47,782 nt of DNA from Octopus bimaculoides (taxonomy: Eukaryota), in contig NC_068988.1 in assembly GCF_001194135.2 (NCBI RefSeq), forward strand, positions 73,835,839 through 73,883,620. Reading direction: 5' to 3'. A program made the position numbers and the translations under genes. The notes under the pieces are model-generated. The model was not told the origin of the DNA. It searched no databases and saw only the letters and a list, made by a program, of their open reading frames with translations. Positions 1-44,150 of the stretch are shown here, one piece after another (position 1 is the first letter of the stretch; each line of letters starts with the position of its first letter).

Positions 1-176
1 ATTTACTTTATATAGATATGAGTTGAAAACTTTCTTCTAGCATTCCACTTAATGTCTATGTTCCATGCTGGCATGGATTGGAGAGTTATTAAGGTAGAAA
101 TATGGTATCGTAGCTACTAACAGTTGAGGGTTGCGTAGTCTAGGCGGCGTTTTTAGATTTCATTATTCTCTTTAAC

Positions 177-203
177 CCAGGCAAAGCCGGGTATTTCTGC
201 TAG
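177..203 (+). mobile_element. Helitron-like 3' terminus (hairpin + CTAG)
   Basis: acccaggcaaagccgggtatttctgCTAG followed by T; short GC hairpin shortly before CTAG; same motif at 34615-34644 and (minus) 47578-47607. Confidence 0.5.
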
Positions 204-1514
204 TTGTAAATAAATACCAAAAATTTCATGATATTAACGGGTGCAGTGTTTATCTTTACTTTAAAATTTCTATCAGAATTGTTTACCTTTAAAGTGAAAA
301 AACAAAACAGACGTTTATGACAGACATGTAAAACATATTTCTGTGTATTTTCATTCGGATAAGGTGTAGAAATTGTTGCACGCATGCACACACAAACAAA
401 AAATTTCCAGACGTTTAGCTGTTATTTTTAGCGTATTGAGTTTCATGGTGAGGGCTTCACATGCTGTGATCCTTTTGCTGTTTCACTATAAATCTATACA
501 TGCACAAACGGACAAAATAGCTGTTCATTTTCACTTTTAGACAGTGAGATGGGGTGGCGATGGGGGTGTGGATCAATTTTGGAGTTTTATTCTTACTCTC
601 CGTATTTTTCCACGTAGATCGAAAAAGAAAATTTCAAAAAAAGTTAAAAATTAAAAATTTTGGGGGGAATTTTGAAAACGTGGTTTTTTGTATATTTGGA
701 ATCTCCATCATTGAAAATATAGGAATCTGGTGAAAAAAAAATTGGAAAGGTTGGTTTTGGTGATGGGGATTGATTGTGCGCCAGGTTCACCGAAAAAACT
801 TACTAACAGAAGTATGCTATCAAAATAAATTGTCTTTTACACACATACCTTTGTTAAATCACTGGATAAATCCCAGCAATGACCTCAGGCTCTCCAATAT
901 TTTAAAATTATAAACAGAAGCAATGGGGAGGAGGTAAAGAAAAATCATAAATTTTCAATTTTTTTAAATAGAATAAATGTGTGAGGAGAAAAATATTAAA
1001 AACATCACATTTATTTGTATCAATCATTAGAAGTTTCATTTTTGATTTGTTGAAAATCAAAATCTTACCTCTCTTATTACTATGTTCCCATTATGGGGTA
1101 GCCATGTGGTTTGGTCGTTGCAGTGCACCCTCACATCTGCCCCACCACTTATACCAGAAACCTTTCTTCAGTACTAAAAACCTGCATGGAAAGCTTTCAT
1201 CAATCCTCACTCCCTGTCACTGGCATCAACACACCAGCAGCGAAAGTATTACAATATAAAAGGCATAACTAGCTCACTTGCATCAGATATATGATAAGTA
1301 TACATACTAGTGGAGTAATTACTGGCACCACTTATCTTTGTATAAACAATCATGTATACCACACCTTCTTCTGGTAGATGCAGCAAGTGTGAATTGAATG
1401 ACTGATGGTAAATTAAAAGCAGGGTTAAATTTATATACACATGTTGGCAAGCAACCATGCAAACCTTATTCTTTTCAAATGCTGAATATTGTCCCCCATT
1501 CCCCTGTTCCCTCT

Positions 1515-4114: not shown

Positions 4115-4265
4115 CCATCCCGAAGGGCATCCAGCTGTAGAAACTCTGCCAAATCAGATTGGAGCCTGGTGTAGCCATCTGGTTTCACCAGTCCTCAGTC
4201 AAATCGTCCAACCCATGCTAGCATGGAAAGTGGACGTTAAACGATGATGAATGAATGAATGAATG
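4115..4265 (+). mobile_element. RTE LINE 3' tail fragment with (GAAT)n end
   Basis: gaagggcatccagctgtagaaactctgccaaatcagattggagcctgg...gcatggaaagtggacgttaaacgatgat, nearly identical to 20695-20830. Confidence 0.85.
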
Positions 4266-4288
4266 AAGCAAAGAAACACACTACCTTC

Positions 4289-4319
<31 letters not shown>

Positions 4320-4351
4320 TTTGTCTAAATGTACTCTTATTATATATACAT

Positions 4352-4860
4352 AGAGAAAAACAATTTGTTTTAAATCTCTGAGCAAGAGATATACAGTAAC
4401 AGTACCGAATAGTAAAGCTTATATGCCAACAGAATGTGTGGCAGTCCTATAAAGGACGATGTTACTGTTGTTTTAGCCCCAGGAAAATATCTTTTCCAGC
4501 TGACTATCGACACACAATTTGTGTCCGTATAACATTTGCACCCAAAGATTTAAATCAAATTCTTTTTTTTCTATACGAGATCAGCAACTGTGTGTTACTT
4601 AAAGAATATATAGTATTTGTGAGTGGAGAGAGCTTTTGTCGCTAGCTTGTGGTTTTCTCACACTAAGGACAGGTAACCACCCAGAAAGCTAGGTCTATAT
4701 CATGTAAGGCTAGAGATAAGAGCGATGACCTCACTTGCAAATTCAAGGGACACAAATTGTGTCGATAGCCAGCTGGAAAAGATGTTTTCCTAGGGCAAAA
4801 ATAACAGTAACATTGTCCTTTATAGGACTGCCACATTCTGTTGGCATATAAACTTTACTA
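4352..4860. mobile_element. Retrozyme-like repeat locus 1 (inverted block plus forward unit with HHR)
   Basis: 4400-4527 is the reverse complement of 4748-4860; internal part matches 8416-8600; carries HHR motif at 4657-4701; both ends abut (TA)n. Confidence 0.7.
4657..4701 (+). ncRNA. Type I hammerhead ribozyme, degenerate copy (family A)
   Basis: ctcaca CTAAGGA caggt-aacc-accca GAAA gctagg TC tatatc; core G5A, helix I 3' strand lost. Confidence 0.65.
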
Positions 4861-5014
4861 TATATGTATGCATGTGTATATATATATATATANNNNNNNN
4901 NNNNNNNNNNNNNNNNNNNNNNNNNNNNNNNNNNNNNNNNNNNNNNNNNNNNNNNNNNNNNNNNNNNNNNNNNNNNNNNNNNNNNNNNNNNNNNNNNNNN
5001 NNNNNNNNNNNNNN

Positions 5015-5044
5015 GAGTTTCATGTTCCCGTTCATCGGACAGTT
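5015..5044 (-). ncRNA. Partial hammerhead-like motif truncated by assembly gap (family B)
   Basis: rc: aactgt CCGATGA acg-ggaa-cat GAAA ctc[N gap]; one core change (U4C) and one helix II mismatch. Confidence 0.4.
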
Positions 5045-5389
5045 TTGTTAGAAATGGGAAAGGAATAACAATGCAATCAAAAGTGATATAAAATTTAAAA
5101 CACAAGGATCCGTTTGATTGGTTGTTTCAAATAATGGTCATGGATGCGTAATGAACAAAACAAATGAATTTAATATAGATTCATCCTATTTTTAAAAAAT
5201 ATCGAAGAAAACCTTAAATAGAAAAATGGGCTCAAAATACATATTGTAAATAATTAATTATATTCGAATTAACACATTAAAATCAAATCAAATAAAATCA
5301 AATCAAATAAAATAAAATATAAGCTGCATTCAAAATAAAATAAAATTACAATAGCATATACGCATACTAGGCTATCCACAACATATATA

Positions 5390-6120
5390 TATGTATATAT
5401 ATACATCAAAATACACAGATGCATACGCACAGACAATCTACTTATATAGGTATATATTTGCAAGGCACAAATATATACATGAATACAAATTTATACACAT
5501 ATACATACACACGTATTATAGTTTGCGCACGAAAAAACTTATGCGATGGTAACAAAAATTGTATCTTAAGCTGTGGAGTGGGGGGGGGTAAAGAGTAACG
5601 TATCTATAGTAACGTTATTAATATAGAAAAGGGGGAAAGTGTGGTTGTCATGAGGAAGGAAAGGAAGAAAGAAAGAGAAAAAGAAAGAAAGACAGAAAAG
5701 GAAGAAAAGAGAGAAAGGTGGGAATGGGAAGAAAGAAGTAGAGAGAGAAAATGAGCAAGAACGTATGTATATAGTAAACCTGCATAAAATTTAGACTGCG
5801 TATATATGTGTATACAAAAATGTATATAGCCTCACGTATATAGATACATATGTGGATATGTACGCAAATACTCGCGAACATAACCGTATACATGCGTATG
5901 CACACATTCAAGTATGTGTGAGTGTGAACCTAAGCGCACATTCCCATATATAACATAGATGCACACACGCGAATAGATGCATGTATGTGTAAATAAATAT
6001 AAGCATATACTCTTACCCATGTATACACAAAAACATACACGCACGAAACTGCATATGCACAAGTGCAAACCCAGGCCCTATATGTGAGCGCAGACGCACG
6101 CATATGAATACGTAAGTGTT
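5390..6120. repeat. (TA/CA)n-rich and GA-rich low-complexity tract
   Basis: Degenerate tatata/cacaca arrays and gaaaga purine run at 5650-5760. Confidence 0.8.
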
Positions 6121-6490
6121 GTTACAATACAGACATCTACATAAAAAACCCTTTTAGATCTCAGCGTATATATGCAGACAACTTTTTAAGAAACTGCTGG
6201 GTGTATAAAAGTTAAAATCGGGCGAAAATACATGCATAATAGAATTCAATATGTCGAATCGTCCATAAAAATGGTAAAATTTGCATACAAAGTGTTTTAA
6301 AATAAATAGAAGAGAATGAAGTAAAAAGTAAAAACAAGAGAGAAGAAAAAACTATGTATATAACAGTTGAAGGTTTTCTTAAAATGACGTAGGGGTCTAT
6401 ACAAAATTCTTACAACGCTAAATAAATCATTTATAATGCGGTACCAATCCAATAGTAAGGAGTCAAACATTATCAAAAAAATATATATAT

Positions 6491-6902
6491 AGGCGAAGGA
6501 GTGGCTGTGTGGTAAGTAGCTTGCTTACCAACCACATGGTCCCGGGTTCAGTCCCACTGCGTGGCACCTTGGGCAAGTGTCTTCTACTATAGCCTCGGGC
6601 CGACCAAAGCCTTGTGAGTGGATTTGGTAGACGGAAACTGAAAGAAGCCCGTCGTATATATGTATATATATATGTATGTGTGTGTATATGTTTGTATGTC
6701 TGTGTTTGTCCCCCCAACATCGCTTGACAACCGATGCTGGTGTGTTTATGTCCCCGTAACTTAGCGGTTCGGCAAAAGGAGGCTGATAGAATAAGTACTA
6801 GGCTTCCAAAGAATAAGTCCTGGGGTAGATTTTCTCGACTAAAGGCGGTGCTCCAGCATGGCCGCAGTCAAATGACTGAAACAAGTAAATTAATAAAAGA
6901 AT
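6491..6902 (+). mobile_element. tRNA-derived SINE (octopus-type, internal TA/TG microsatellite)
   Basis: Pol III A box (tggctgtgtggtaag) and B box (ggttcagtccc) head, body tggcaccttgggcaagtgtctt..., A-rich tail; near-identical inverted copy at 41249-41637. Confidence 0.9.
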
Positions 6903-6904
6903 AC

Positions 6905-7315
6905 TATCCATACGGTATATTACTTGCCAACATTTTAAATTTGGAGGCATGTCTACATGCATTTAAAAGTTCGCGTCTTTGGTTTAGCGCCTTCTTATCT
7001 TCGAATAAAATATTCAGTTTTTCCAATAAACAAAGATCGCATTTCAATGGTCTTTTATGGGCACTGTGTCTGTAAGGTGATGCTCTACCTAAAATCCTCT
7101 ATGTCACGTTGAAAGGCTGGGCTCCATTTTCCTTTAATTGCCAGACGTATTTTGCCAGGCTATCTAAAAGAATTTTTGTGCGAATACAGCCTGGTTTTGA
7201 AAGAATTTTCTGTAGCCCCTGTATAAGTTCTATAATCGTGCGAGCCTTCTATCTGGACTTTGGCCCTATATACGATACCAAAGGTAGTGTGTTGCTTACG
7301 GGATGGAACAACTAA
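6905..7315 (-). mobile_element. Penelope-like element, GIY-YIG endonuclease C-terminal fragment
   Basis: rc translates GIVYRAKVQIEGSHDYRTYTGATENSFKTRLYSHKNSFR/SLAKYVWQLKENG...*RILGRASPY...KCDLCLLEKLNILFEDKKALNQRRELLNACRHASKFKML; one frameshift, one TAG. Confidence 0.9.
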
Positions 7316-7384
7316 ATTATATATATATACCCAAGTGATATGTTGTTATATTGTTTGTTCTAGACAACATATATACACTACCTT

Positions 7385-8022
7385 ATATAAGGGCCTTTCC
7401 CTTGGAATGAAAGGCAGATTGTATGATACCTGTGTGCAGTGAAACATGGGCTGTAACCACTGAGGATACACATAGGCTGGAATGAAATGAAGCTTGTATG
7501 ATTTGCTAGATGTGCAATGTCAGTGTGCATGTATGGCAGAGTGTAAGCACCTTGAGAGAAAATTCAGATGTGGTGTGCAAGAGAGACAATTGTGCTGGTA
7601 TGGTCATGTGATGCATATGCATGAGGATAGCTGTATAAAGAAATGCTGATCTTTAACTGTGGAGGGAACTTAAGGAAGACGTATATCCGAGAAGACATGG
7701 GACAAGGCGCTGAAGCATGATATTCAAACGTTGAGCTTCACAGAGGTGATGACAAATGACTGAAACCTTTGGTGATATGCTGCCCTTGAGAACACTCATC
7801 AAGCCAGCGTTACATAACTGGCACCCATGACAGTGATACATAAAAGCAGCTGTGCCAGTGGAACATAAAAAGCACCCATTACACTCTTGAAGTGGTTGGC
7901 ATTAAGAAGGGCATCCAGCCATAGGATGCATGCCAAATCAGACTGGAACCTGGTGCAGCTCTCTGGTTTACCAGTTCCATCTAACCCATGCCAGCATGGA
8001 AAGCAGACACTTGATGATGATG
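7385..8022 (+). mobile_element. RTE LINE 3' fragment (ORF2 C-terminus, 3'UTR, (GAT)n tail)
   Basis: KGLSLGMKGRLYDTCV; WYGHVMHM motif; tail matches the other copies. Confidence 0.85.
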
Positions 8023-8119
8023 GTGTTATATAGATACATACAGCTGATATATTGTCATATTTACTCTAAATATCATATTTACACTACCCTACAACTGATG
8101 TGTCCATATAGCATTTGCA

Positions 8120-8157
8120 CTCACAGAACTAGGTTTCTGGGTGGTCCTCAGTGTGAG
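8120..8157 (-). ncRNA. Type I hammerhead ribozyme, helix II-deleted copy (family A)
   Basis: rc: ctcaca CTGAGGA ccaccca GAAA cctagt TC tgtgag; helix I perfect 6 bp, core intact, 5' strand of helix II missing. Confidence 0.7.
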
Positions 8158-8497
8158 AAAACCACAAGCTAGTGACAAAAGCTTTCTCCATTCGCAAACA
8201 CTATATATTCTCTAAGCGACAGTCACTGATCTCGTATAGAGAAAAACAAATTGTGTGTTGATAATTACTGGAAAAGATGTTTCTCTGGGGCTAAAATAAC
8301 AGTAACAGTGTCCTTTATAGCACTGCCACATTCTGTTGGCATATAAACGTTACTACTTGGTACTATTACTGTATATCTCTCACTCAGAGATTTAAAACAA
8401 ATTGTTTTGCTCTTTACGATATCAGCAACTGTGTGTCACTTAAAGAATATGTAGTATTTGCGAGTGGAGAGAGCTTTCATCACTAGCTTGTGGTCTT

Positions 8498-8542
8498 CTC
8501 ACAGTGAGGATGAGTAACCACTCAGAAACCTAGGTCTGTGAG
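8498..8542 (+). ncRNA. Type I hammerhead ribozyme, near-intact copy (family A)
   Basis: ctcaca GTGAGGA tgagt-aacc-actca GAAA c-ctag-g TC^tgtgag; helices I (6 bp), II (5 bp) and III with palindromic CUAG loop; single core change C3G; predicted cleavage after 8536. Confidence 0.8.
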
Positions 8543-8989
8543 TATCACTTAAGGCTAGAGATGGGAGCAATGACATCCCTTACAAATGCTGTATGGACAC
8601 AAATTGTGTGTCGATAACCAGCTGGAAAAGATGTTTTCCTGGGGCTAAAACAACAGTAATATCATCTTTTATAGGACTGCCACATTCTGTTGGCATATAA
8701 ACTTTACTATTCAGTACTGTTACTGTATATTTCTCGTTCAGACATTGAAAACAAATCGTTTTTCTCTCTATATATATATTTTCTAATCACTGTTACAAAA
8801 TATGTGATACCTGATGTTTTTATTTTGTTTATGTTGACCGTAGTTTAAAAACCTGCATTTGTGACACTTTATCATCTATGATTTCTTGAACAAATAGGTG
8901 AGTGGCAAACAGGTAGAAAAGCATAGGTTTCCTTACAACCTCCCAAGTGTTGATTCTATGAGAAAATGCACCCAGGATACTGTGAAATT

Positions 8990-9150
8990 ATTGGTAGTGG
9001 GAAGGACATCTGCCCATAGAAACTAAATCAAAATTACATGTACAAGTGTCAGTCTATGATAGCAGTGACTCTTAATAAGAACTGACTTGGACCATGATCC
9101 TTCCAACCCATGCCAGGTTGGAAAGCAGATGTAAGACGCTGACAATGATG
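8990..9150 (+). mobile_element. Diverged RTE 3' tail
   Basis: ggaaggacatc...ccaacccatgccaggttggaaagcagatgt...gatgag. Confidence 0.55.
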
Positions 9151-9367: not shown

Positions 9368-11161
9368 TTACCACATATCACAGGAATATAACTTCTCTTC
9401 CATATGAATGTGTTTGTGTATATTTAAGTTACTATTAATATTGAATGATTTACCACAGACATCACAGTGATATGGTTTTTCACCTGTATGAATTCGAACA
9501 TGTTTATTTAAGACATCACTAACGGAGAATGATTTACCGCAGATATCACAGTGATATGGTTTCTCCCCAGTATGAATACGTCTGTGTTTAGTTAAATCTC
9601 CCTTTCCAGAGAATGATTTAGCACAGATATCACATTGATATGGCTTTTCTCCAGTATGGGTACGTTTGTGTTTAGTTACATCACTATTTTGAGAGAATGA
9701 TTTACCACAGATATCACAATGATATGGTTTTTCTCCTGTATGAGTACGTTTGTGAATAATTAAGTGACTTGTTTGAGAGAATGATTTATTACAGATATCA
9801 CAGCCATATGGTTTCTCTCCTGTATGAGTATGTTTGTGAATAACTAAGTGAATTCTTTGAAAGAATGATATACCACAGATATCACATTGAAATGGTTTCT
9901 CACCTGTATGAATATGTTTGTGAGTGGTTAAAGTACCTCCTTCAGAGAATGATTTACCACAGATATCACAGTGATATGGCCTCTCTCCTGTATGAGTATG
10001 TTTGTGTCTAGTTAAGCTGCTTCCTCTGGAGAATGATTTACTACATATATCACACTGATATGTATTTTCTCCTGTATGCATTTGTTTGTGAATAGTGAAG
10101 TGACTTCTTACAGAGAATGATTTACCACAGGCATCACAGTGATATGGCTTCTCTCCTGTATGAATGCTTTTGTGAATATTTAAGGCATTTCCATTAGAGA
10201 ATGATTTACTACAAATATCACAGTGATATGGCTTCTCTCCTGTATGAATTCGTTTGTGTCTAGTTAAGCTGCTTCCTCCAGAGAATGATTTATTGCAGAT
10301 ATCACAGTGATATGGCTTCTCTCCTGTATGTGTACGTTTGTGGGTAATTAAGTGATCATTTACAGAAAATGATTTACCACAGATATTACACTGATATGGC
10401 CTCTCTCCTGTATGAATATATCTATGCCTAATCAAGTGACCTTTTTGAAAGAATGATTTACCACAGATATCACAGTGATATTCTTTCACTCCTGTATGAA
10501 TATATTTGTGTTTAGTTAAATTACTTCCTTCTGAGAATGACTTACCACAGATTTCACAGTGATATGCCTTCTGACCAGTATGAATGCGTTTGTGGGCAAT
10601 CAAGCTGCTTCCTCCAGAAAATGATTTACCACAGATACCACAATGATATGGCTTCTCTCCTGTATGAATTCGCTTGTGAGTAATTAAGTGATCCTTTTGA
10701 GAGAATGATTTACCACAAATATCACAGTGATATGGCTTCTCTCCCGTATGAATGTGTTTATGTCTATTTAGGGTATTTCCTTGAGAGAATGATTTACCAC
10801 AAACATTACAGTGATAGGGCTTTTCTCCTGTGTGAATGCGTTTGTGAGTAGTTAAATCACTACTACGAGAGAATGATTTAGCACAGATATCACAGTTATA
10901 TGGTTTTTCTCCAGTATGAATACGTATGTGCTTAGTTAAATCACTACTTCCAGCAAATGATTTACCACAGATATCACAGTGATGTTTCTCTCCTGTATGA
11001 ATATGTTTGTAACTTGTTAGATAACCTTTCTGAGAGAATGATTTTTTAGAGATATCACAGCTGTATGATGATTTTCCTTTTTCTTCCAGTATCTCATTAG
11101 GAAAATCAATCCTTTTAGACTGTGTTTTACCATAAACCTGAGCCTCACATAATTCCATCAT
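9368..11161 (-). CDS. C2H2 zinc-finger array protein (597 aa; 19 intact fingers, 1 degenerate N-terminal finger, truncated terminal half-finger)
   Basis: Uninterrupted ORF of CDICGKSF-x5-L-x2-H-x3-H TGEKPY repeats; first in-frame ATG after an upstream TAA; no KRAB/SCAN/ZAD-like N-terminus visible. Confidence 0.95.
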
Positions 11162-25025: not shown

Positions 25026-26462
25026 TTATTCTCCTGCATGAATACATTCATGTGTAGATAAGAGACTTTTGCGAGAGAATGATTTACTACAGATGTAGCA
25101 GTGATATGGTTTTTCTCCTCTATGAATATGTCTGTGTGCAGCCAACTGATCATTTCGAGAGAATGACTTACCACAGATATCACACTGATATGGTTTTGCT
25201 CCTGTATGAATACGTTTGTGAGTATTTGATTCACTACTCTGAGAGAAAGATTTACCACAAATATCACACTGATATGGTTTCTCTCCTGTGTGAATGCGTT
25301 TGTGAGTAGTTAAGTTACTTCCTGCATGGAATGACTTGCCACAGATATCGCAGTGATATGGTTTCTCTCCTGTGTGAATGCGTTCGTGAGTAGTTAAGTG
25401 ATATTTTCTAGAGAATGATTTACCACAGATATCACAGTGGTAGGGTTTCTCTCCAGTATGAATTCGTTTGTGAGTAATTAGGTTACTTCTTACAGAGAAT
25501 GACTTTTCACAGATATTACATTGATAAGGCTTCAGTCCTGTATGAATACGTTTGTGGTTAGCGAAATTATTACTTCCAGAGAATGATTTGCCACAGACAT
25601 CACAATGATATGGTTTCTCACCAGTATGAATACGTTTGTGAGAAATTAAGTGCTCATTTTGTGAAAATGATTTACCACAGATATCACAATGATATGGCTT
25701 AGCTCCTGTATGAGTGCGTTTGTGAGTAATTAAGTGATAATTTCTAGAGAATGATTTACCACAAATATCACAATTATATGGTTTCTCTCCAGTATGAATG
25801 CGTCTATGTGCAGTTAAGCTACTGTAATCAGAAAAAGATTTATCACAGATATCACAGCAATATGGTTTCTCCCCTGTATGTATACGTATGTGTTTAGTTA
25901 AGGTACTATTTACAGAGAATGATTTACCACAGATATCACAATGATATGGTTTCTCTCCTGTATGAATACGTTTATGGGTAGATAAACCACATGTTTGTGG
26001 GAATGATTTGCCACAGATATCACAGTGATATGGTTTCTCTCCTGTATGAATACGCTTGTGGGTAGATAAACGACACGTTTGTGGGAAAGATTTGCCACAG
26101 ATATCACAGCGATATGGTTTCTCCCCTGTATGAATACGTGTGTGGTTAGTTAAATAATCATTCCTAGAGAATGATTTACCACAGATATTACAGTGATAGG
26201 GTTTCTCACCTGTATGAATACGCTTGTGTGTAGTTAAGGAATTTCCTTCAGTGAAGGACTTACCACAAATATCACAGTGATATGCTTTCTCTTTTGCATG
26301 AATGTGCTTATGTTTAGTCAAGCTGCCCGACTGAGAGAATGATTTACCACAAATATCACAGTAATACGGCTTTTCTCCTGTATGAATACGTTTGTGAGTA
26401 GTTAAGTAACTATTTTTACAGAATGATAAACCACAGATATTACAGAGATATGATTTTCCCAT
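25026..26462 (-). CDS. C2H2 zinc-finger array protein (478 aa from first ATG; 17 fingers)
   Basis: ORF track starts at a GTG (26543); frame is closed by TGA near 26606 and first ATG is at 26462 (MGKSYLCNICG...); TGEKPY-linked fingers. Confidence 0.93.
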   Translation of the reverse strand: MGKSYLCNICGLSFCKNSYLTTHKRIHTGEKPYYCDICGKSFSQSGSLTKHKHIHAKEKAYHCDICGKSFTEGNSLTTHKRIHTGEKPYHCNICGKSFSRNDYLTNHTRIHTGEKPYRCDICGKSFPQTCRLSTHKRIHTGEKPYHCDICGKSFPQTCGLSTHKRIHTGEKPYHCDICGKSFSVNSTLTKHIRIHTGEKPYCCDICDKSFSDYSSLTAHRRIHTGEKPYNCDICGKSFSRNYHLITHKRTHTGAKPYHCDICGKSFSQNEHLISHKRIHTGEKPYHCDVCGKSFSGSNNFANHKRIHTGLKPYQCNICEKSFSVRSNLITHKRIHTGEKPYHCDICGKSFSRKYHLTTHERIHTGEKPYHCDICGKSFHAGSNLTTHKRIHTGEKPYQCDICGKSFSQSSESNTHKRIHTGAKPYQCDICGKSFSRNDQLAAHRHIHRGEKPYHCYICSKSFSRKSLLSTHECIHAGE

Positions 26463-26893
26463 GTTCTTTGCAGGTCTTGAATAAAAATGTTTATTCCTTA
26501 AGTTTCTTTCAAAATTAGTTTTCCATAATTTTATTGCCTCCACAAGATATGGCTCATTTTCTTGTTTTTTGTACTTACAAATAGTTTTACATCTATATTT
26601 CCATCAGTTGTGATCTTTGTCCATATCTGAAGATGTTGCAAGCTTCTTTATAAAATTTCTCCAAGTCTAGTTAGAAAGTAAACACATTTGGTACAAATTC
26701 CAAATAGTGAAGTAGAGAAATGTTATTAACAATCTCACTCAGAGGAAATATTTCACAGTTATTCTACAACAGACATATAAATTGAGTTATACCTATTTTG
26801 TATAACACCTTCTATTAGTCTCTAAAAGATGATAAACATTGATGACGATGTAGCTGATGTAAAAAATCCTTTTAATCCAATGCCATTTGATAT

Positions 26894-29869: not shown

Positions 29870-31543
29870 AGCCCCCAGCCCATCAGGAATCACTGCCAAG
29901 ATGCTTAAAATATCTGGCGGTATAGGTTCTGGTCTAGTCACACACATAGTTAACCAGGTGGTACATGAAGGAGTTATACCCAATGACTAGTGTAGCAGCA
30001 CCATAGTCAACTGCTACAAAGGTAAAAGTGACACTTAAACAGAAATAATTAGAGGTATCAAATTGTTAGATCAGGTGATGAAAGTCACAGGGAGGGTCAT
30101 AGCCCAGCTAATTAAGGAAAGAGTAAGTCTAGATAAGATGCAGTTTGGTTTTGTGCCAGGGAGAAGCACTACTGATGCTATATTTCTGGTAAGGCAGCTG
30201 CAGGAGAAATACATAGCCAAAGATAAACCTCTGTACTTGGCCTTTGTTGAAATGGAGAAAGCCTTTGACAGGGTCCCCCAATCATATTATCTGGTGATCA
30301 ACAAGGAAACTAAGGATAGGCAAGTGGTTGGTGAAAACTGTACAAGCCATGTACAGGGATGCTGTCAGTAACGCAAGAGTTAGCAACAAGTATAGTGAAG
30401 AATTCAGGGTACAAATAGGGGTTCACCAAGGCTCAGTCCTCAGCCCCCTCTTGTTCATCATAGTCCTCCAGGCAATAACAGAGGAATATAAGACAAGCTG
30501 TCCCTAGAAGCTCCTCTATGCTGATGACATTGTTCTTATAGCTGAATTACTACCTGAACTAGAGAAGAAGTCTCAGGTGTGGAAGTAAGGTCTAGAATTG
30601 AAGGGCCCTAGAGTTAACCTAACAAAAGCCAAAGTCTTAATAAGTAAGAAAGCAGACAAATCACAAACCCCCTCAGGTAGATGGCCCTGCTCGATCGGCA
30701 GGAAAGGCATAGTTAGAAATTCCATAAGATGTACTTGGTGTAATCTATGGACACATAAGAGGTGCAGCAATATCAGAGGAAGGTTAACAGGTAAACTAGT
30801 TTTTGTATGTGGATGGTGCACAAGTACAGAAAATAGACTCCATCAAATGCCTGTGGGGAAAACTAGAAGTAGTTGATAGCTTCCATTACCTAGGTAACCA
30901 AGTCAGTAGCAGAGGTGGATGCTCTGAGAGCATAACTACTAGAATAAGAATAGGTTGGGCAAAGTTCAGGGAGCTCCTACCTCTGCTGGTAACAAAGGGC
31001 CTCTCCCTCAGCATGAAAGGCAGATTGTATGATGCCTGCTGCACAGCAGTGAAACATGGGCTGCCAAGGACATGCGTAGGCTTGAAAGAAATGAAGTTAG
31101 TATGCTTCACTCAATGTGCACTGTCAGTGTGCATATGCACAACAGAGTGTAAACATCTTGAGAGAAAAGTTGGGCATAAGATGTGGACAGCTGAGTGAAG
31201 AAGTGCCAGTCTCTACTAGTGGAAGGAAGCTGTGGAAAAGGGAGACCCAGGAAGCCATGGGACTAGGCGTTGAAGAATGATCTTCAAACGTTGCATCTCA
31301 CAGAGGCAATGACTAGTGACCGAGACCGTTGGCGATATGCTGTGCTTGAGAAGACCTGAAAAGTCAAGTGAAATGATAGTTGCGGCTGTTGTCTGTTGAA
31401 GTGGTTGGCATTAGGAAGGGCATCCAGCTGTAGAAACCATGCCAAATCAGACAGGAGTCTGGTGGAACTCCTCAACTTACCAGCCCTGGTCAAACTGTCC
31501 AACCCATGCCAGCATGGACAAATGGATGCTAAATGATGATGAT
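29870..31543 (+). mobile_element. RTE LINE, 5'-truncated, RT plus PHD-like module plus tail
   Basis: APSPSGIT; QFGFVPGRSTTDAIF; EKAFDRVP; KLLYADDIVLIA; WPCSIGRKG...HKRC; (GAT)n end. Confidence 0.92.
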
Positions 31544-42212: not shown

Positions 42213-42615
42213 TCTAGTCCGAAGACAAATTTAACTCTTCACCTTTGGGAGGTGGAAAGCTGTTACAGTCATTGGTTAATTGGTAAACAGAGAATAAAAA
42301 GTCTGCCATTAGTGAGGACGGGTTATCTCTTCTAGACCAGCTATTTAGAGAGGGGAATAAGAGATATATCACTTGGCTTGCTAATGGATCGTAAGGACTC
42401 TTCTGGGTTTAGTCAGCAAACGGGGAATCCCGTGTTTGCAGCTGGTAGTGCTTGAAGTGGATGCACGTGTGAAAATTTCTTAGTGAGTACTCAGCAACCC
42501 AGGTCTCAGGGAGTCTTTGAGTATCCTAGCATGTTCAGCTATGCAGAGCTTGCAGCGCACACTCCCGTTATGTTGGGACCTGGCCGTTCTAAGATCTTCC
42601 ACTTGATATCGTATG
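42213..42615 (-). mobile_element. Penelope-like element 2, GIY-YIG C-terminus plus 3'UTR
   Basis: rc DIKWKIL.../...NGSVRCKLCIAEHARILKDSLRPGLLSTH*EIFTR (matches the WxIL...CxLCxxE...LLNxRxEI pattern). Confidence 0.7.
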
Positions 42616-42619
42616 GGAT

Positions 42620-44150
42620 CACTTCATTTTGAGTCGCCACACATGGCTGACCAGGTATGGAAGCAAAACCTGGAATCAAAAGGCCTTAAAGTTAACCTAG
42701 CGAAGTTGTTGTTCACAAGAAAGCAGATAAGACTCTCTTACTCACTTCCTTGCTCAATATGTAGAAAAGGAGTCGGAAATAATTCCATTTGTTGCACCCA
42801 GTGTAAGCTATGGATACATAAAAGGTGCAGTGGAATCACATGTAAATTAATAGAAGTCGTCTTCATGTGTGGCAGATGTGCAGGAACAATACACACTCAG
42901 GACACACGGGAATTAAACTCTCTCAAATGCCCAGGAGGCTCTTTTGAGGTTGTAGACAGTTTCTGTTACCTAGTTGACTAAGTTAACATTGGTGGAGGAT
43001 GTTCTGAAAGTATTGTTGCTAGTATAGGAGTACGATAGAAGTTCAGAGAGTTATTACCTCTGTTGGTAACAAAAGGACTCTCTCTCAGAGTGAATAGCAT
43101 ACTGTATGATGCTTGTGTACGAATGGCTACACACCATGGTTGTAAGAGAAAAGTTGAGCATAGGAGGAATCAGATGCAGCATGCAAAAGAGTTAGTTTGG
43201 ACATGTGATGCATATGAATGTAGACAACAGTATAAAGAGGTACCAATAACTGAAAGTGTATGGTACCTGTGGAAGAAGGAGACCCAGGAAAACATGGAAT
43301 GAAGTAACAGGACCAATCTCAGAATGTTGGGCCTCACAGAAGAGATGACAATGGACCAAGATGACTGGTGATATGTGGTTCTTGAGAAAACCCACCCATC
43401 CCAGCGAAACTGAGTTCTGGGAGCACTGTATCAAGAAAAAAATTCACACACCCTACCCCAACAAAACAAACTACACCTCTTCACTTTTTCACATTTCCTC
43501 TTTTTCATGCACTATGCTTATGCTTATCTCCCGCTCCCCAGTCTTGTCCTCACTGCCCTGCTCACTGTAGCATTACTGTCCTGTTGTCCCCAACCTCCTC
43601 TATGTACCGACATTTCACCAGTTATAGCATTCCCAACCCCACATTTATATGAAGTCCCTACTCCCTACTCATGCACCCTTGACAATACTCTACCATCCCA
43701 TTTATATATTGATCCCTGTACCTTGAGAGTATGCCTTGGCACTTCACCACCATATTTCTCTTTCTCTTTCTCTGACTGGGTAACCATGTATCTCCTCTAC
43801 AGCAAGACACCTGTTTCTATCCCCCTGTCACACTAACCTCTCATCACCTGGCACAAGGCCACCTCTTTTAATTCCCACTCCCTCTCAAAGAATCTTTGTC
43901 TTGTAAATTACTTGGTGACTCCACCAGTGTTGGTGCATCCAAGTCCACACTATAAAGTGGTTAGTGTTTGGAAGAGCATCAAGATCTAAAAACCATGCCA
44001 AAACAAGCCTCACCAGTGTTGGTGCCATGTAAAAGCACTCAGTCCACTCTATAAGGGGGTTGATGTTAGGAAGGGTATCCAACCGTTAAAACCCTGTCAA
44101 AACTGACAGTGAAGCTTGGTGCAGCCTTCTGCCAAGCCAGCCCCTATTTA
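42620..44150 (+). mobile_element. RTE LINE 3' part with PHD-like module and long 3'UTR
   Basis: KQNLESKGLKVNLAK...CSICRKGVGNNSICCTQCKLWIHKRCSG...CGRC; KGLSLRVN..LYDACVR; CT-rich UTR and duplicated tail units. Confidence 0.85.

What the first reader, a model, noticed from the sequence alone, without database searches (positions are those of the whole stretch)
4352..8770. Retrozyme-like family: ~353-bp non-coding unit carrying a type I hammerhead ribozyme, in tandem and inverted arrays
Seen: two loci (4352-4860, 8101-8770) are built from the same blocks in tandem (period 353 bp at 8247/8600) and inverted arrangements, ending on (TA)n. Three copies give the consensus CTCACA-CTGAGGA-TGRGT AACC ACYCA-GAAA-C CTAG G-TC^TGTGAG, a complete type I HHR. 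Helix II covaries between copies (tgagt/actca vs the accca strand), helix III has a palindromic CUAG loop, and helix I extends (gtggt/atcac) past an internal loop. Each local copy has a different lesion (C3G; G5A plus lost helix I; helix II deletion), so the ancestor was probably active. Established: metazoan retrozymes are non-autonomous tandem monomers of a few hundred nt with such dimer-cleaving HHRs, make circular RNAs and are thought to use PLE machinery. Inference: this is an octopod retrozyme family, and a PLE endonuclease remnant lies between the two loci (6905-7315). I do not know of a description in cephalopods but cannot search to confirm.
Basis: partly seen in the sequence, partly recalled or inferred. 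Interest (0 to 1): 0.88.

Follow-up and report, generated by a model that had tools for sequence, protein, structure and literature searches.

The report
Decayed hammerhead-ribozyme retroelement copies in octopus
Two nearby stretches are old, broken copies of a 353-base non-coding mobile repeat that once carried a self-cutting hammerhead RNA; this kind of element is already known from mussels, corals and amphibians and is here seen in an octopus-like genome.

Summary
Two loci (4352-4860 and 8099-8770) are built from one 353-bp non-coding unit in head-to-tail and head-to-head arrangement, and they end on (TA)n. Each locus carries a type I hammerhead with a 2-bp helix III and a palindromic CUAG loop. 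All three local copies are broken, and Rfam models find none of them.

Genomic reads from the same species show that the family is real, with roughly 150-600 copies at 80% likeness or better. Their majority letters restore the CUGAGGA core (C3 in 88% of reads). In the reads N7 varies, while no variant reaching 8% is listed at the other core letters. One helix II pair switches A-U to G-C at matching frequencies.

The ORF remnant on the minus strand (7309-6907) is a GIY-YIG endonuclease of the Hydra clade of Penelope-like elements. That clade inserts into (TA)n and carries hammerheads.

RNA data show only weak read-through transcription. There is no pile-up of ends at the cleavage site and no sign of abundant circles.

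Verdict: a fossil non-LTR retrozyme-type family, a new member of a known kind. No description in cephalopods turned up in the open literature searched. Self-cleavage and circular RNA remain untested.

The parts
4289..4351 (.). (TA)n and AT-rich flank next to the 3' end of the inverted copy of locus A; the putative target microsatellite
4352..4538 (-). Locus A, inverted 5'-truncated copy (unit 337..353+1..167). Its 3' end at unit ~167-178 abuts (TA)n.
   Evidence: 87% identical to the unit
4539..4860 (+). Locus A, direct copy (unit 135..353+1..109), head-to-head with the inverted copy
   Evidence: Junction 4538/4539 is spanned by identical DNA contigs 4482-4606 in four runs.
4657..4701 (+). Hammerhead copy A, dead: CTAAGGA (G5A), G.G mismatch in helix III, 3' strand of helix I lost
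   Evidence: read; printed
4861..4892 (.). TA-rich microsatellite closing locus A; the assembly gap 4893-5014 follows
6907..7309 (-). 5'-truncated GIY-YIG endonuclease remnant of a Hydra-clade Penelope-like element. It has one frameshift (7163/7158) and one in-frame stop (7099-7101). Its truncated end abuts (TA)n at 7316-7330.
   Evidence: clade motifs from PMC8557442
8099..8254 (-). Locus B, inverted 5'-truncated copy (unit 151..297 plus a 20-nt piece of unit ~337-356)
8120..8157 (-). Hammerhead copy B-inverted, dead: core CTGAGGA intact, 5' strand of helix II deleted, G16.2>T
   Evidence: read; printed
8247..8599 (+). Locus B, full 353-bp unit (the reference unit)
   Evidence: DNA contigs with 0 mismatches
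8490..8548 (+). Hammerhead copy B-direct with extended helix I (GTGGT/ATCAC). The core motif is 8498-8542, C3 is 8504 (G here), and the predicted cleavage lies between 8536 and 8537.
8600..8770 (+). Locus B, second tandem unit, partial (unit 1..170), 85% identical to the first. It ends at the family's usual 3' terminus.
8771..8781 (.). (TA)n at the 3' terminus of locus B

Best explanation
These are decayed insertions of a short non-autonomous retroelement of the metazoan non-LTR retrozyme type, that is, a Penelope-like-element (PLE) dependent repeat.

Shown: a 353-nt non-coding unit with one type I hammerhead, present as short head-to-tail arrays with an adjacent inverted 5'-truncated copy, ending at (TA)n.

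Inferred life cycle:
1. Multimeric transcripts are cut after GUC at each hammerhead. Helix III has only 2 bp and a palindromic CUAG loop, so two hammerheads probably pair to form an 8-bp intermolecular helix III (a double hammerhead).
2. The 353-nt monomer may then be ligated into a highly self-paired circle.
3. A PLE reverse transcriptase/GIY-YIG endonuclease nicks a (TA)n microsatellite. This was probably a Hydra-clade enzyme, a remnant of which lies between the two loci.
4. The nicked end primes on the ...UUUUCUCU-UA... site at unit position ~170-178.
5. Copying more than one unit length gives the tandem. Priming from the second strand gives the inverted 5'-truncated partner.

The family is old (copies are 80-87% alike). 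All three local ribozymes are dead, and the locus is now only passively transcribed.
For: - Architecture.
- A shared 3' terminus next to (TA)n occurs in B-direct and A-inverted. It also appears in other genomic and RNA copies: loose ends ...CTCTCTATATATA behind 8408 and 8769 and (TA)n behind 8407. DNA depth falls from ~235 to ~130 across 8397-8421.
- Genome-wide reads at 80% likeness or better: 8504 G>C in 144 of 164 reads restores C3. N7 (8508) varies, and no variant reaching 8% is listed at U4, G5, A6, G8, A9, GAAA, U16.1 or C17. The hypergeometric P is about 2.5e-4.
- 8513 A>G (~73%) and its pairing partner 8522 T>C (~71%) change together in frequency. The helix I pair 8499/8541 also varies on both sides.
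- Cofolding two consensus copies gives the 8-bp ACCUAGGU intermolecular helix III.
- The circular monomer folds at -98.5 kcal/mol, z = -3.2, 68% paired, GC 38.5%.
- There is no shared ORF.
- The Hydra-clade EN remnant has no Cys pair in the GIY-YIG core and has CxxC...E...N...CxH. Its homologues have CxCX5C. PMC8557442 says this clade inserts in (TA)n and has canonical hammerheads.
- Mussel retrozyme repeats are 350-390 bp (PMC7229834).
- The family is present in two further species labels; one contig carrying C3 covers the whole hammerhead.
Against: - No Rfam hammerhead hit at the gathering score or at E<=10.
- Every local copy is mutated.
- About 70% of family copies have C at 10.1 opposite A at 11.1, a mismatch next to the core.
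- RNA coverage is low and equal in both read orientations. There are no read ends at 8536/8537 and no back-joints. Known retrozymes are highly expressed.
- The local PLE remnant shares no sequence with the unit. No full-length PLE with a matching pLTR was found.
- Linkage of the covarying positions within single reads could not be seen.
- Copy numbers rest on an assumed ~0.7x read sampling.
Confidence: 0.7

Rival explanations
1. The blocks are pseudo-LTR fragments of an autonomous Penelope-like element. They are leftovers of full-length insertions whose ORF was lost, not a separate non-autonomous family.
For: PLE pLTRs carry type I hammerheads and form tandem/inverted insertions (PMC8557442). 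Retrozymes are related to pLTRs (preprint 10.64898/2026.07.22.740005). A PLE EN remnant lies 800 bp away. PLEs expanded in Octopus at JC ~0.2 (PMC13282606).
Against: Every adjacency around the 353-bp circle is seen in at least two independent copies, with no ORF between them. About half of the family reads run through the 3'-terminus position into the next unit. The unit has no similarity to the remnant or its flanks.
Confidence: 0.15
2. An ordinary satellite-like tandem repeat that spread by DNA-level duplication or unequal exchange. The hammerhead would be a fossil with no role in its spread.
For: Tandem units within locus B are as diverged (85%) as copies between loci, so the array is old. 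No RNA evidence of processing was found.
Against: The copies are dispersed and number in the hundreds, arrays are short, and the terminus next to (TA)n recurs. Head-to-head 5'-truncated partners are typical of PLE-type reverse transcription. The core letters are kept while the free position N7 varies.
Confidence: 0.08
3. A TIR-bounded DNA transposon or MITE inserted at TA. The ~110-bp inverted arms of locus A would be its terminal inverted repeats.
For: Locus A has arms 4409-4521 / 4753-4861 that are 92-97% complementary, and it is flanked by TA repeats on both sides.
Against: The termini differ between and within loci: A left = unit ~170, A right = unit 109, B left = unit ~355, B right = unit 170. 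Locus B has a true head-to-tail tandem. No transposase was found.
Confidence: 0.03
4. The hammerhead-like motif is a chance resemblance in a repeat.
For: No Rfam hit. With one core mismatch allowed, loose hits occur at 0.6 per shuffled window.
Against: Three copies carry different lesions. An independent read consensus restores the full core, with variation at N7 and a pair change on both sides in helix II. The motif is compact, with 6+5+2 bp helices.
Confidence: 0.03

Closest known systems
Metazoan non-LTR retrozymes (Cervera & de la Pena 2020, PMC7229834), e.g. the Mytilus galloprovincialis 350-390-bp repeats
   Same: Short non-coding head-to-tail unit (353 bp), GC below 45%, one type I hammerhead per unit, a 2-bp helix III with a tetraloop, a strongly self-paired monomer, and co-occurrence with PLEs in the genome.
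   Different: All local ribozymes are mutated. Arrays are very short (1.5 units or fewer). RNA is scarce and no circles were seen, whereas mussel circles reach a high share of total RNA. The host is a cephalopod, for which the literature search found no description. A fixed 3' terminus on (TA)n is visible here.
Pseudo-LTR hammerheads of Penelope-like elements, especially the Hydra clade (Craig et al. 2021, PMC8557442; Cervera & de la Pena 2014, PMC4209133)
   Same: Type I hammerhead, tandem plus inverted 5'-truncated insertion structure, and insertion into (TA)n. A Hydra-type endonuclease remnant lies in the same window.
   Different: There is no RT/EN ORF between the repeats. The unit closes on itself after 353 bp. 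No sequence is shared with the local PLE remnant.
Amphibian satellite 2 / axolotl HHR_Amex repeats and Schistosoma Sm-alpha (classical type I hammerhead repeats)
   Same: Weak helix III capped by a palindromic tetraloop, implying cleavage as a double hammerhead. HHR_Amex2 also has a mismatch at the base of helix II.
   Different: Copy number here is hundreds, not tens of thousands. The sequence is unrelated. Activity is untested.

Membership tests
Non-LTR (metazoan) retrozyme | Type I hammerhead with a complete catalytic core in the repeat unit | tested here: inconclusive
   The three local copies each carry a disabling lesion. The family majority from genomic reads has the full core: CUGAGGA, GAAA, U16.1, C17. 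It also has a C.A mismatch at 10.1/11.1 in ~70% of copies. The preprint's 'active' definition (a hammerhead in all repeats) is not met at these loci.
Non-LTR (metazoan) retrozyme | Head-to-tail tandem repeats of about 170-400 bp | tested here: met
   Period 353-354 at 8247/8600, 1.48 units. About half of the family reads continue through the terminus position into a next unit.
Non-LTR (metazoan) retrozyme | Non-coding, low GC (<45%) | tested here: met
   GC is 38.5%. Only short ORFs occur, none shared between the loci.
Non-LTR (metazoan) retrozyme | Monomer RNA highly self-paired | tested here: met
   Circular fold -98.5 kcal/mol, 68% paired, z = -3.2 against 200 dinucleotide shuffles.
Non-LTR (metazoan) retrozyme | Abundant linear and circular monomer RNA in tissues | tested here: not met
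   Tens of reads per ~12 million in three RNA-seq runs, in both orientations. No ends at 8536/8537 and no back-joints. Contigs show low-depth read-through. Caveats: the libraries are cDNA of unknown selection, and a circle from a tandem has the same junction as the genome.
Non-LTR (metazoan) retrozyme | Self-cleavage at the hammerhead | not testable with these tools
   Needs in vitro transcription of the consensus monomer and dimer.
Non-LTR (metazoan) retrozyme | Co-occurrence with autonomous PLEs | tested here: met
   EN remnant at 7309-6907 and a weaker one near 42489-42686. PLEs are annotated in Octopus genomes.
Rfam Hammerhead_1 (type I) covariance model | Score at or above the gathering threshold | tested here: not met
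   No hammerhead hit at the gathering score or at E<=10 over 4200-9000. The consensus itself could not be submitted to the tool.
PLE pseudo-LTR | Repeat flanks an RT-EN ORF (the period equals the element length) | tested here: not met
   The period is 353 bp and there is no ORF between repeats.
Hydra-clade PLE endonuclease (for 6907-7309) | GIY-YIG core without the CCHH cysteines; CxxC and CxH around the conserved E and N | tested here: met
   Remnant: IVYRAKVQIEGSHDYRTYTGAT...CDLCLLEK...NQRRELLNACRH. One homologue reaches Pfam GIY-YIG above its cut-off.
Hydra-clade PLE endonuclease (for 6907-7309) | CxCX5C linker and an upstream RT | tested here: inconclusive
   The remnant is truncated just upstream of GIY. 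Its homologues P0001, P0005, P0060 and P0064 have CNCRxxxxxC and RT-thumb-like N-termini.
TIR DNA transposon / MITE | The same inverted termini at every copy | tested here: not met
   The four outer ends fall at unit positions ~170, 109, ~355 and 170.

The most novel reading that the evidence does not exclude
The unit belongs to a larger octopod superfamily. An 80-nt core (8583-8664) is shared with a relative about ten times more abundant, at roughly 3000 copies. This superfamily would be mobilised specifically by Hydra-clade PLEs through microhomology priming on (TA)n. Younger members may still self-cleave and form circular RNA in some tissues. That would make octopus a system in which the retrozyme-PLE partnership and its target choice can be read directly from insertion ends.
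Probability: 0.15. Interest if true: 0.55.

Novelty: new member of a known kind. Interest (0 to 1): 0.38.

Why it matters
It extends hammerhead-bearing retrozyme-type repeats to cephalopods, where repeat annotations list Penelope-like elements but do not mention ribozymes. It also shows a recurring 3' end on (TA)n, alongside a Hydra-clade endonuclease remnant. That hints at which PLE clade moves such elements and how priming occurs. For genome annotation, it explains an unclassified repeat and a local inverted repeat that looks like an RNA-editing substrate. It does not change what is known about how retrozymes work.

Tried and rejected
- Rfam cmscan over the window (gathering score) and over 4200-9000 (E<=10): no hammerhead hit.
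- Rfam on two loci encoding Hydra-type EN homologues (L001, L002): no hammerhead. The 3' region of L001 showed no canonical motif by eye. A direct comparison with a Hydra-PLE hammerhead was therefore not obtained.
- Bridging the gap 4893-5014 with DNA contigs: failed, because (TA)n unitigs dominate.
- Looking for circle or cleavage signatures in RNA: none found.
- Pfam on the read-through remnant and on most homologues: no hit. Only P0109 reaches GIY-YIG.
- Direct protein search with the remnant: only one hit, so a second search from that hit was needed.
- The TIR/MITE reading was rejected on inconsistent termini.
- Segmental duplication of A and B was considered because both lie ~100 bp after a LINE tail (D6, 79% alike). 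It was not pursued: that similarity is at repeat-family level, and the block order differs between the two loci.
- The unit was not found elsewhere in the window.
Full report
WHAT IS THERE. A blastn of the unit 8247-8599 against the whole 47.8-kb window finds only two loci. The repeat finder and pairwise alignments give the same picture.

Locus A consists of two parts. The first, 4352-4538, is the reverse complement of unit positions 337..353+1..167. It is joined head-to-head at 4538/4539 to a direct copy, 4539-4860, covering unit 135..353+1..109.

Locus B also has two parts. The inverted copy spans 8099-8254 (unit 151..297 plus a 20-nt piece of unit ~337-356). It is followed by a direct run, 8247-8770, of 1.48 units with a period of 353-354.

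Copies are 80-87% identical, and the two adjacent units of B are only 85% alike. Every adjacency around the 353-bp circle is seen in at least two copies. The unit has no ORF shared between the loci and 38.5% GC. DNA contigs from independent samples tile 8040-8800 without a mismatch and span the A junction. The arrangement, and the lesions described below, are therefore not assembly artefacts.

THE GAP. The gap 4893-5014 could not be bridged. Its left edge is (TA)n, and contigs and loose ends there are heterogeneous. It starts 32 nt after the last unit base, and the region is non-coding, so neither the ribozyme reading nor the block structure depends on it. The A-B spacing, and whether A resumes beyond the microsatellite, stay unknown.

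THE RIBOZYME. B-direct (8498-8542) reads CTCACA-GTGAGGA-TGAGT-AACC-ACTCA-GAAA-C-CTAG-G-TC^TGTGAG. This is a type I hammerhead: helix I is open, and helices II and III are closed by loops. C3 is replaced by G. Helix III is a 2-bp stem (A15.1-U16.1, C-G) with a palindromic CUAG loop. Helix I is extended by GTGGT/ATCAC beyond a small internal loop.

A-direct (4657-4701) has G5A, a G.G mismatch in helix III, and no 3' strand of helix I. B-inverted (8120-8157, minus strand) keeps CTGAGGA but has lost the 5' strand of helix II and has G16.2>T.

Rfam models score none of these copies. A home-made strict descriptor finds nothing in the window. With one core mismatch allowed, B-direct is the only compact hit among four, against 0.6 expected in shuffles. 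The window alone is therefore suggestive, not decisive.

FAMILY EVIDENCE FROM READS. Two 2026 genomic runs of the same species label were laid on the locus at 80% likeness or better. Each supplied about 1.9 Gb of reads. That is roughly 0.7x if the genome is about 2.8 Gb, as for O. vulgaris.

Depth over the hammerhead is about 85-125 on its 5' half and about 420 on its 3' half, which suggests roughly 150-600 copies. An 80-nt block (8583-8664) reaches about 2300. Its loose ends run on into related but more diverged sequence, which points to a larger superfamily.

The majority letters differ from the local copy exactly where the local copy is broken. Position 8504 is C in 144 of 164 reads, which restores CUGAGGA. 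In the reads, N7 (8508) varies, the one free position of CUGANGA. No variant reaching 8% is listed at U4, G5, A6, G8, A9, GAAA, U16.1 or C17. About 21 of the 45 motif positions vary, giving a hypergeometric P of about 2.5e-4.

In helix II, 8513 A>G (about 73%) and its partner 8522 T>C (about 71%) occur at matching frequencies, an A-U to G-C switch. The helix I pair 8499/8541 also varies on both sides. Linkage within single reads could not be read out, so this is covariation in frequency only.

One caveat: about 70% of copies have C at 10.1 opposite A at 11.1, a mismatch at the base of helix II. A base-of-helix-II mismatch is reported for axolotl HHR_Amex2, but its effect here is unknown.

FOLDING. 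The consensus monomer does not take the hammerhead fold as its minimum-energy structure (-15 against -20 kcal/mol). Two copies cofold with an 8-bp intermolecular ACCUAGGU helix III. This is expected for the short-helix-III type I hammerheads, which act as dimers. The 353-nt monomer, folded as a circle starting at the cleavage site, is rod-like: -98.5 kcal/mol, 68% paired, z = -3.2.

ENDS AND TARGETS. B-direct and A-inverted both stop at unit ~170-178 (...AAACAAATCGTTTTTCTCTC) directly on (TA)n. Other copies do the same. RNA and contig loose ends behind 8407/8408 and 8769 read ...CTCTCTATATATA or (TA)n. Genomic depth falls from about 235 to about 130 across 8397-8421. This suggests that roughly half of the copies end there and half run on into another unit, so arrays are short.

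In both loci the two copies face outward with their 5' ends meeting in the middle. This matches the tandem plus inverted 5'-truncated structure described for PLE insertions. Target-site duplications are not discernible in microsatellites, as that paper also notes (PMC8557442). The four outer ends fall at different unit positions, which argues against a TIR-bounded DNA transposon.

THE ORF REMNANT. On the minus strand, 7309-6907 encodes ...GIVYRAKVQIEGSHDYRTYTGATENSFKTRLYSHKNSF / LAKYVWQLKENG...CDLCLLEK...NQRRELLNACRHASKF. It has one frameshift and one in-frame stop.

Its relatives number 544 proteins, from echinoderm and other eukaryotic assemblies and from marine metagenomes. They carry a CxCX5C motif upstream and RT-thumb-like N-termini, and one passes Pfam GIY-YIG. 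The defining motifs of the Hydra clade of C-terminal-EN PLEs are the missing CCHH cysteines, the CxCX5C linker, and CxxC and CxH around the conserved E and N. That clade is reported to insert into (TA)n and to carry canonical hammerheads.

The remnant is 5'-truncated at a (TA)n (7316-7330). A tRNA-derived SINE cuts off its 3' UTR. It shares no sequence with the unit. It therefore shows that such elements lived in this genome, not that this copy was the partner.

RNA. Three 2026 RNA-seq runs give only tens of family reads per ~12 million, in both orientations. There is no accumulation of ends at 8536/8537 and there are no back-joints. Older RNA assemblies contain the locus at low depth in contigs that continue into the flanks, which indicates read-through transcription. 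There is thus no support for abundant circles. Library selection is unknown, however, and a circle derived from a tandem has the same junction as the genome.

TAXON AND LITERATURE. The closest named relatives of a window ORF are Octopus vulgaris proteins. The window also holds C2H2 zinc-finger arrays. Related copies occur in two further species labels, and one 277-nt contig spans the whole hammerhead with C3.

Full-text searches found retrozymes described in cnidarians, a mussel, amphibians and other vertebrates, with a general statement that they occur 'from molluscs to arthropods'. Nothing on cephalopods turned up. Octopus repeat papers list PLEs, with an expansion at JC ~0.2, but mention no ribozymes.

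VERDICT. The best reading is a fossil family of non-LTR retrozyme type: a non-autonomous, PLE-dependent, hammerhead-bearing 353-bp repeat, inserted at (TA)n, with all local ribozymes dead. The main rival is that these are pLTR leftovers of an autonomous PLE. Satellite, MITE and chance readings are unlikely. Self-cleavage, circular RNA and the identity of the mobilising PLE are inferred, not shown. This is a new member of a known kind and of moderate interest.

Noticed in passing
window 8119-8543 (sites 8170, 8183, 8184, 8191, 8204, 8206, 8415, 8484, 8496): RNA-run contigs differ from the window only by T>C, at 9 sites lying in or beside the two arms of the inverted repeat 8145-8221/8434-8510. 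DNA contigs of two samples show T at all of these except 8191. This looks like A-to-I hyper-editing of a minus-strand read-through transcript folded into dsRNA by the inverted copies.
   Followed up: partly
window 8583-8664: This 80-nt block contains small hairpins (GACACAAATTGTGTGTC; GGAAAAGATGTTTTCC). It has about ten times the genomic read depth of the rest of the unit. Reads continue on both sides into related but more diverged sequence, which suggests a larger superfamily of roughly 3000 copies.
   Followed up: partly
window 6494-6895 (+): A tRNA-derived SINE (A/B-box-like head GGCTGTGTGGTAAG...GGTTCAGTCCC) lies directly after the stop codon of the PLE endonuclease remnant. It is bordered by (TA)n at 6480-6493.
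   Followed up: no
window 7390-8022 (+) and 4150-4249 (+): LINE 3' fragments (RT C-terminal region ...LCWYGHVMHMHEDSCIKKC...; tails 79% alike) each end about 100 bp upstream of one of the two hammerhead-repeat loci. A related fragment lies at 30803-31198.
   Followed up: no
window 42489-42686 (-): A weak second match to the Hydra-type endonuclease family (tblastn E from 5e-4 to 0.1 with several homologues), possibly another decayed PLE remnant.
   Followed up: no
window 9368-11161 (-) and 25026-26543 (-): Two long C2H2 zinc-finger ORFs (597 and 505 aa). Locus B lies on the 3' side of the first in its transcript sense, which may explain the low read-through transcription.
   Followed up: no
window 5380-6100: Sub-threshold Rfam mir-297 matches (best 43.7 bits against a gathering score of 90) fall in TA/CA-rich low-complexity sequence. 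They are most likely compositional artefacts.
   Followed up: no
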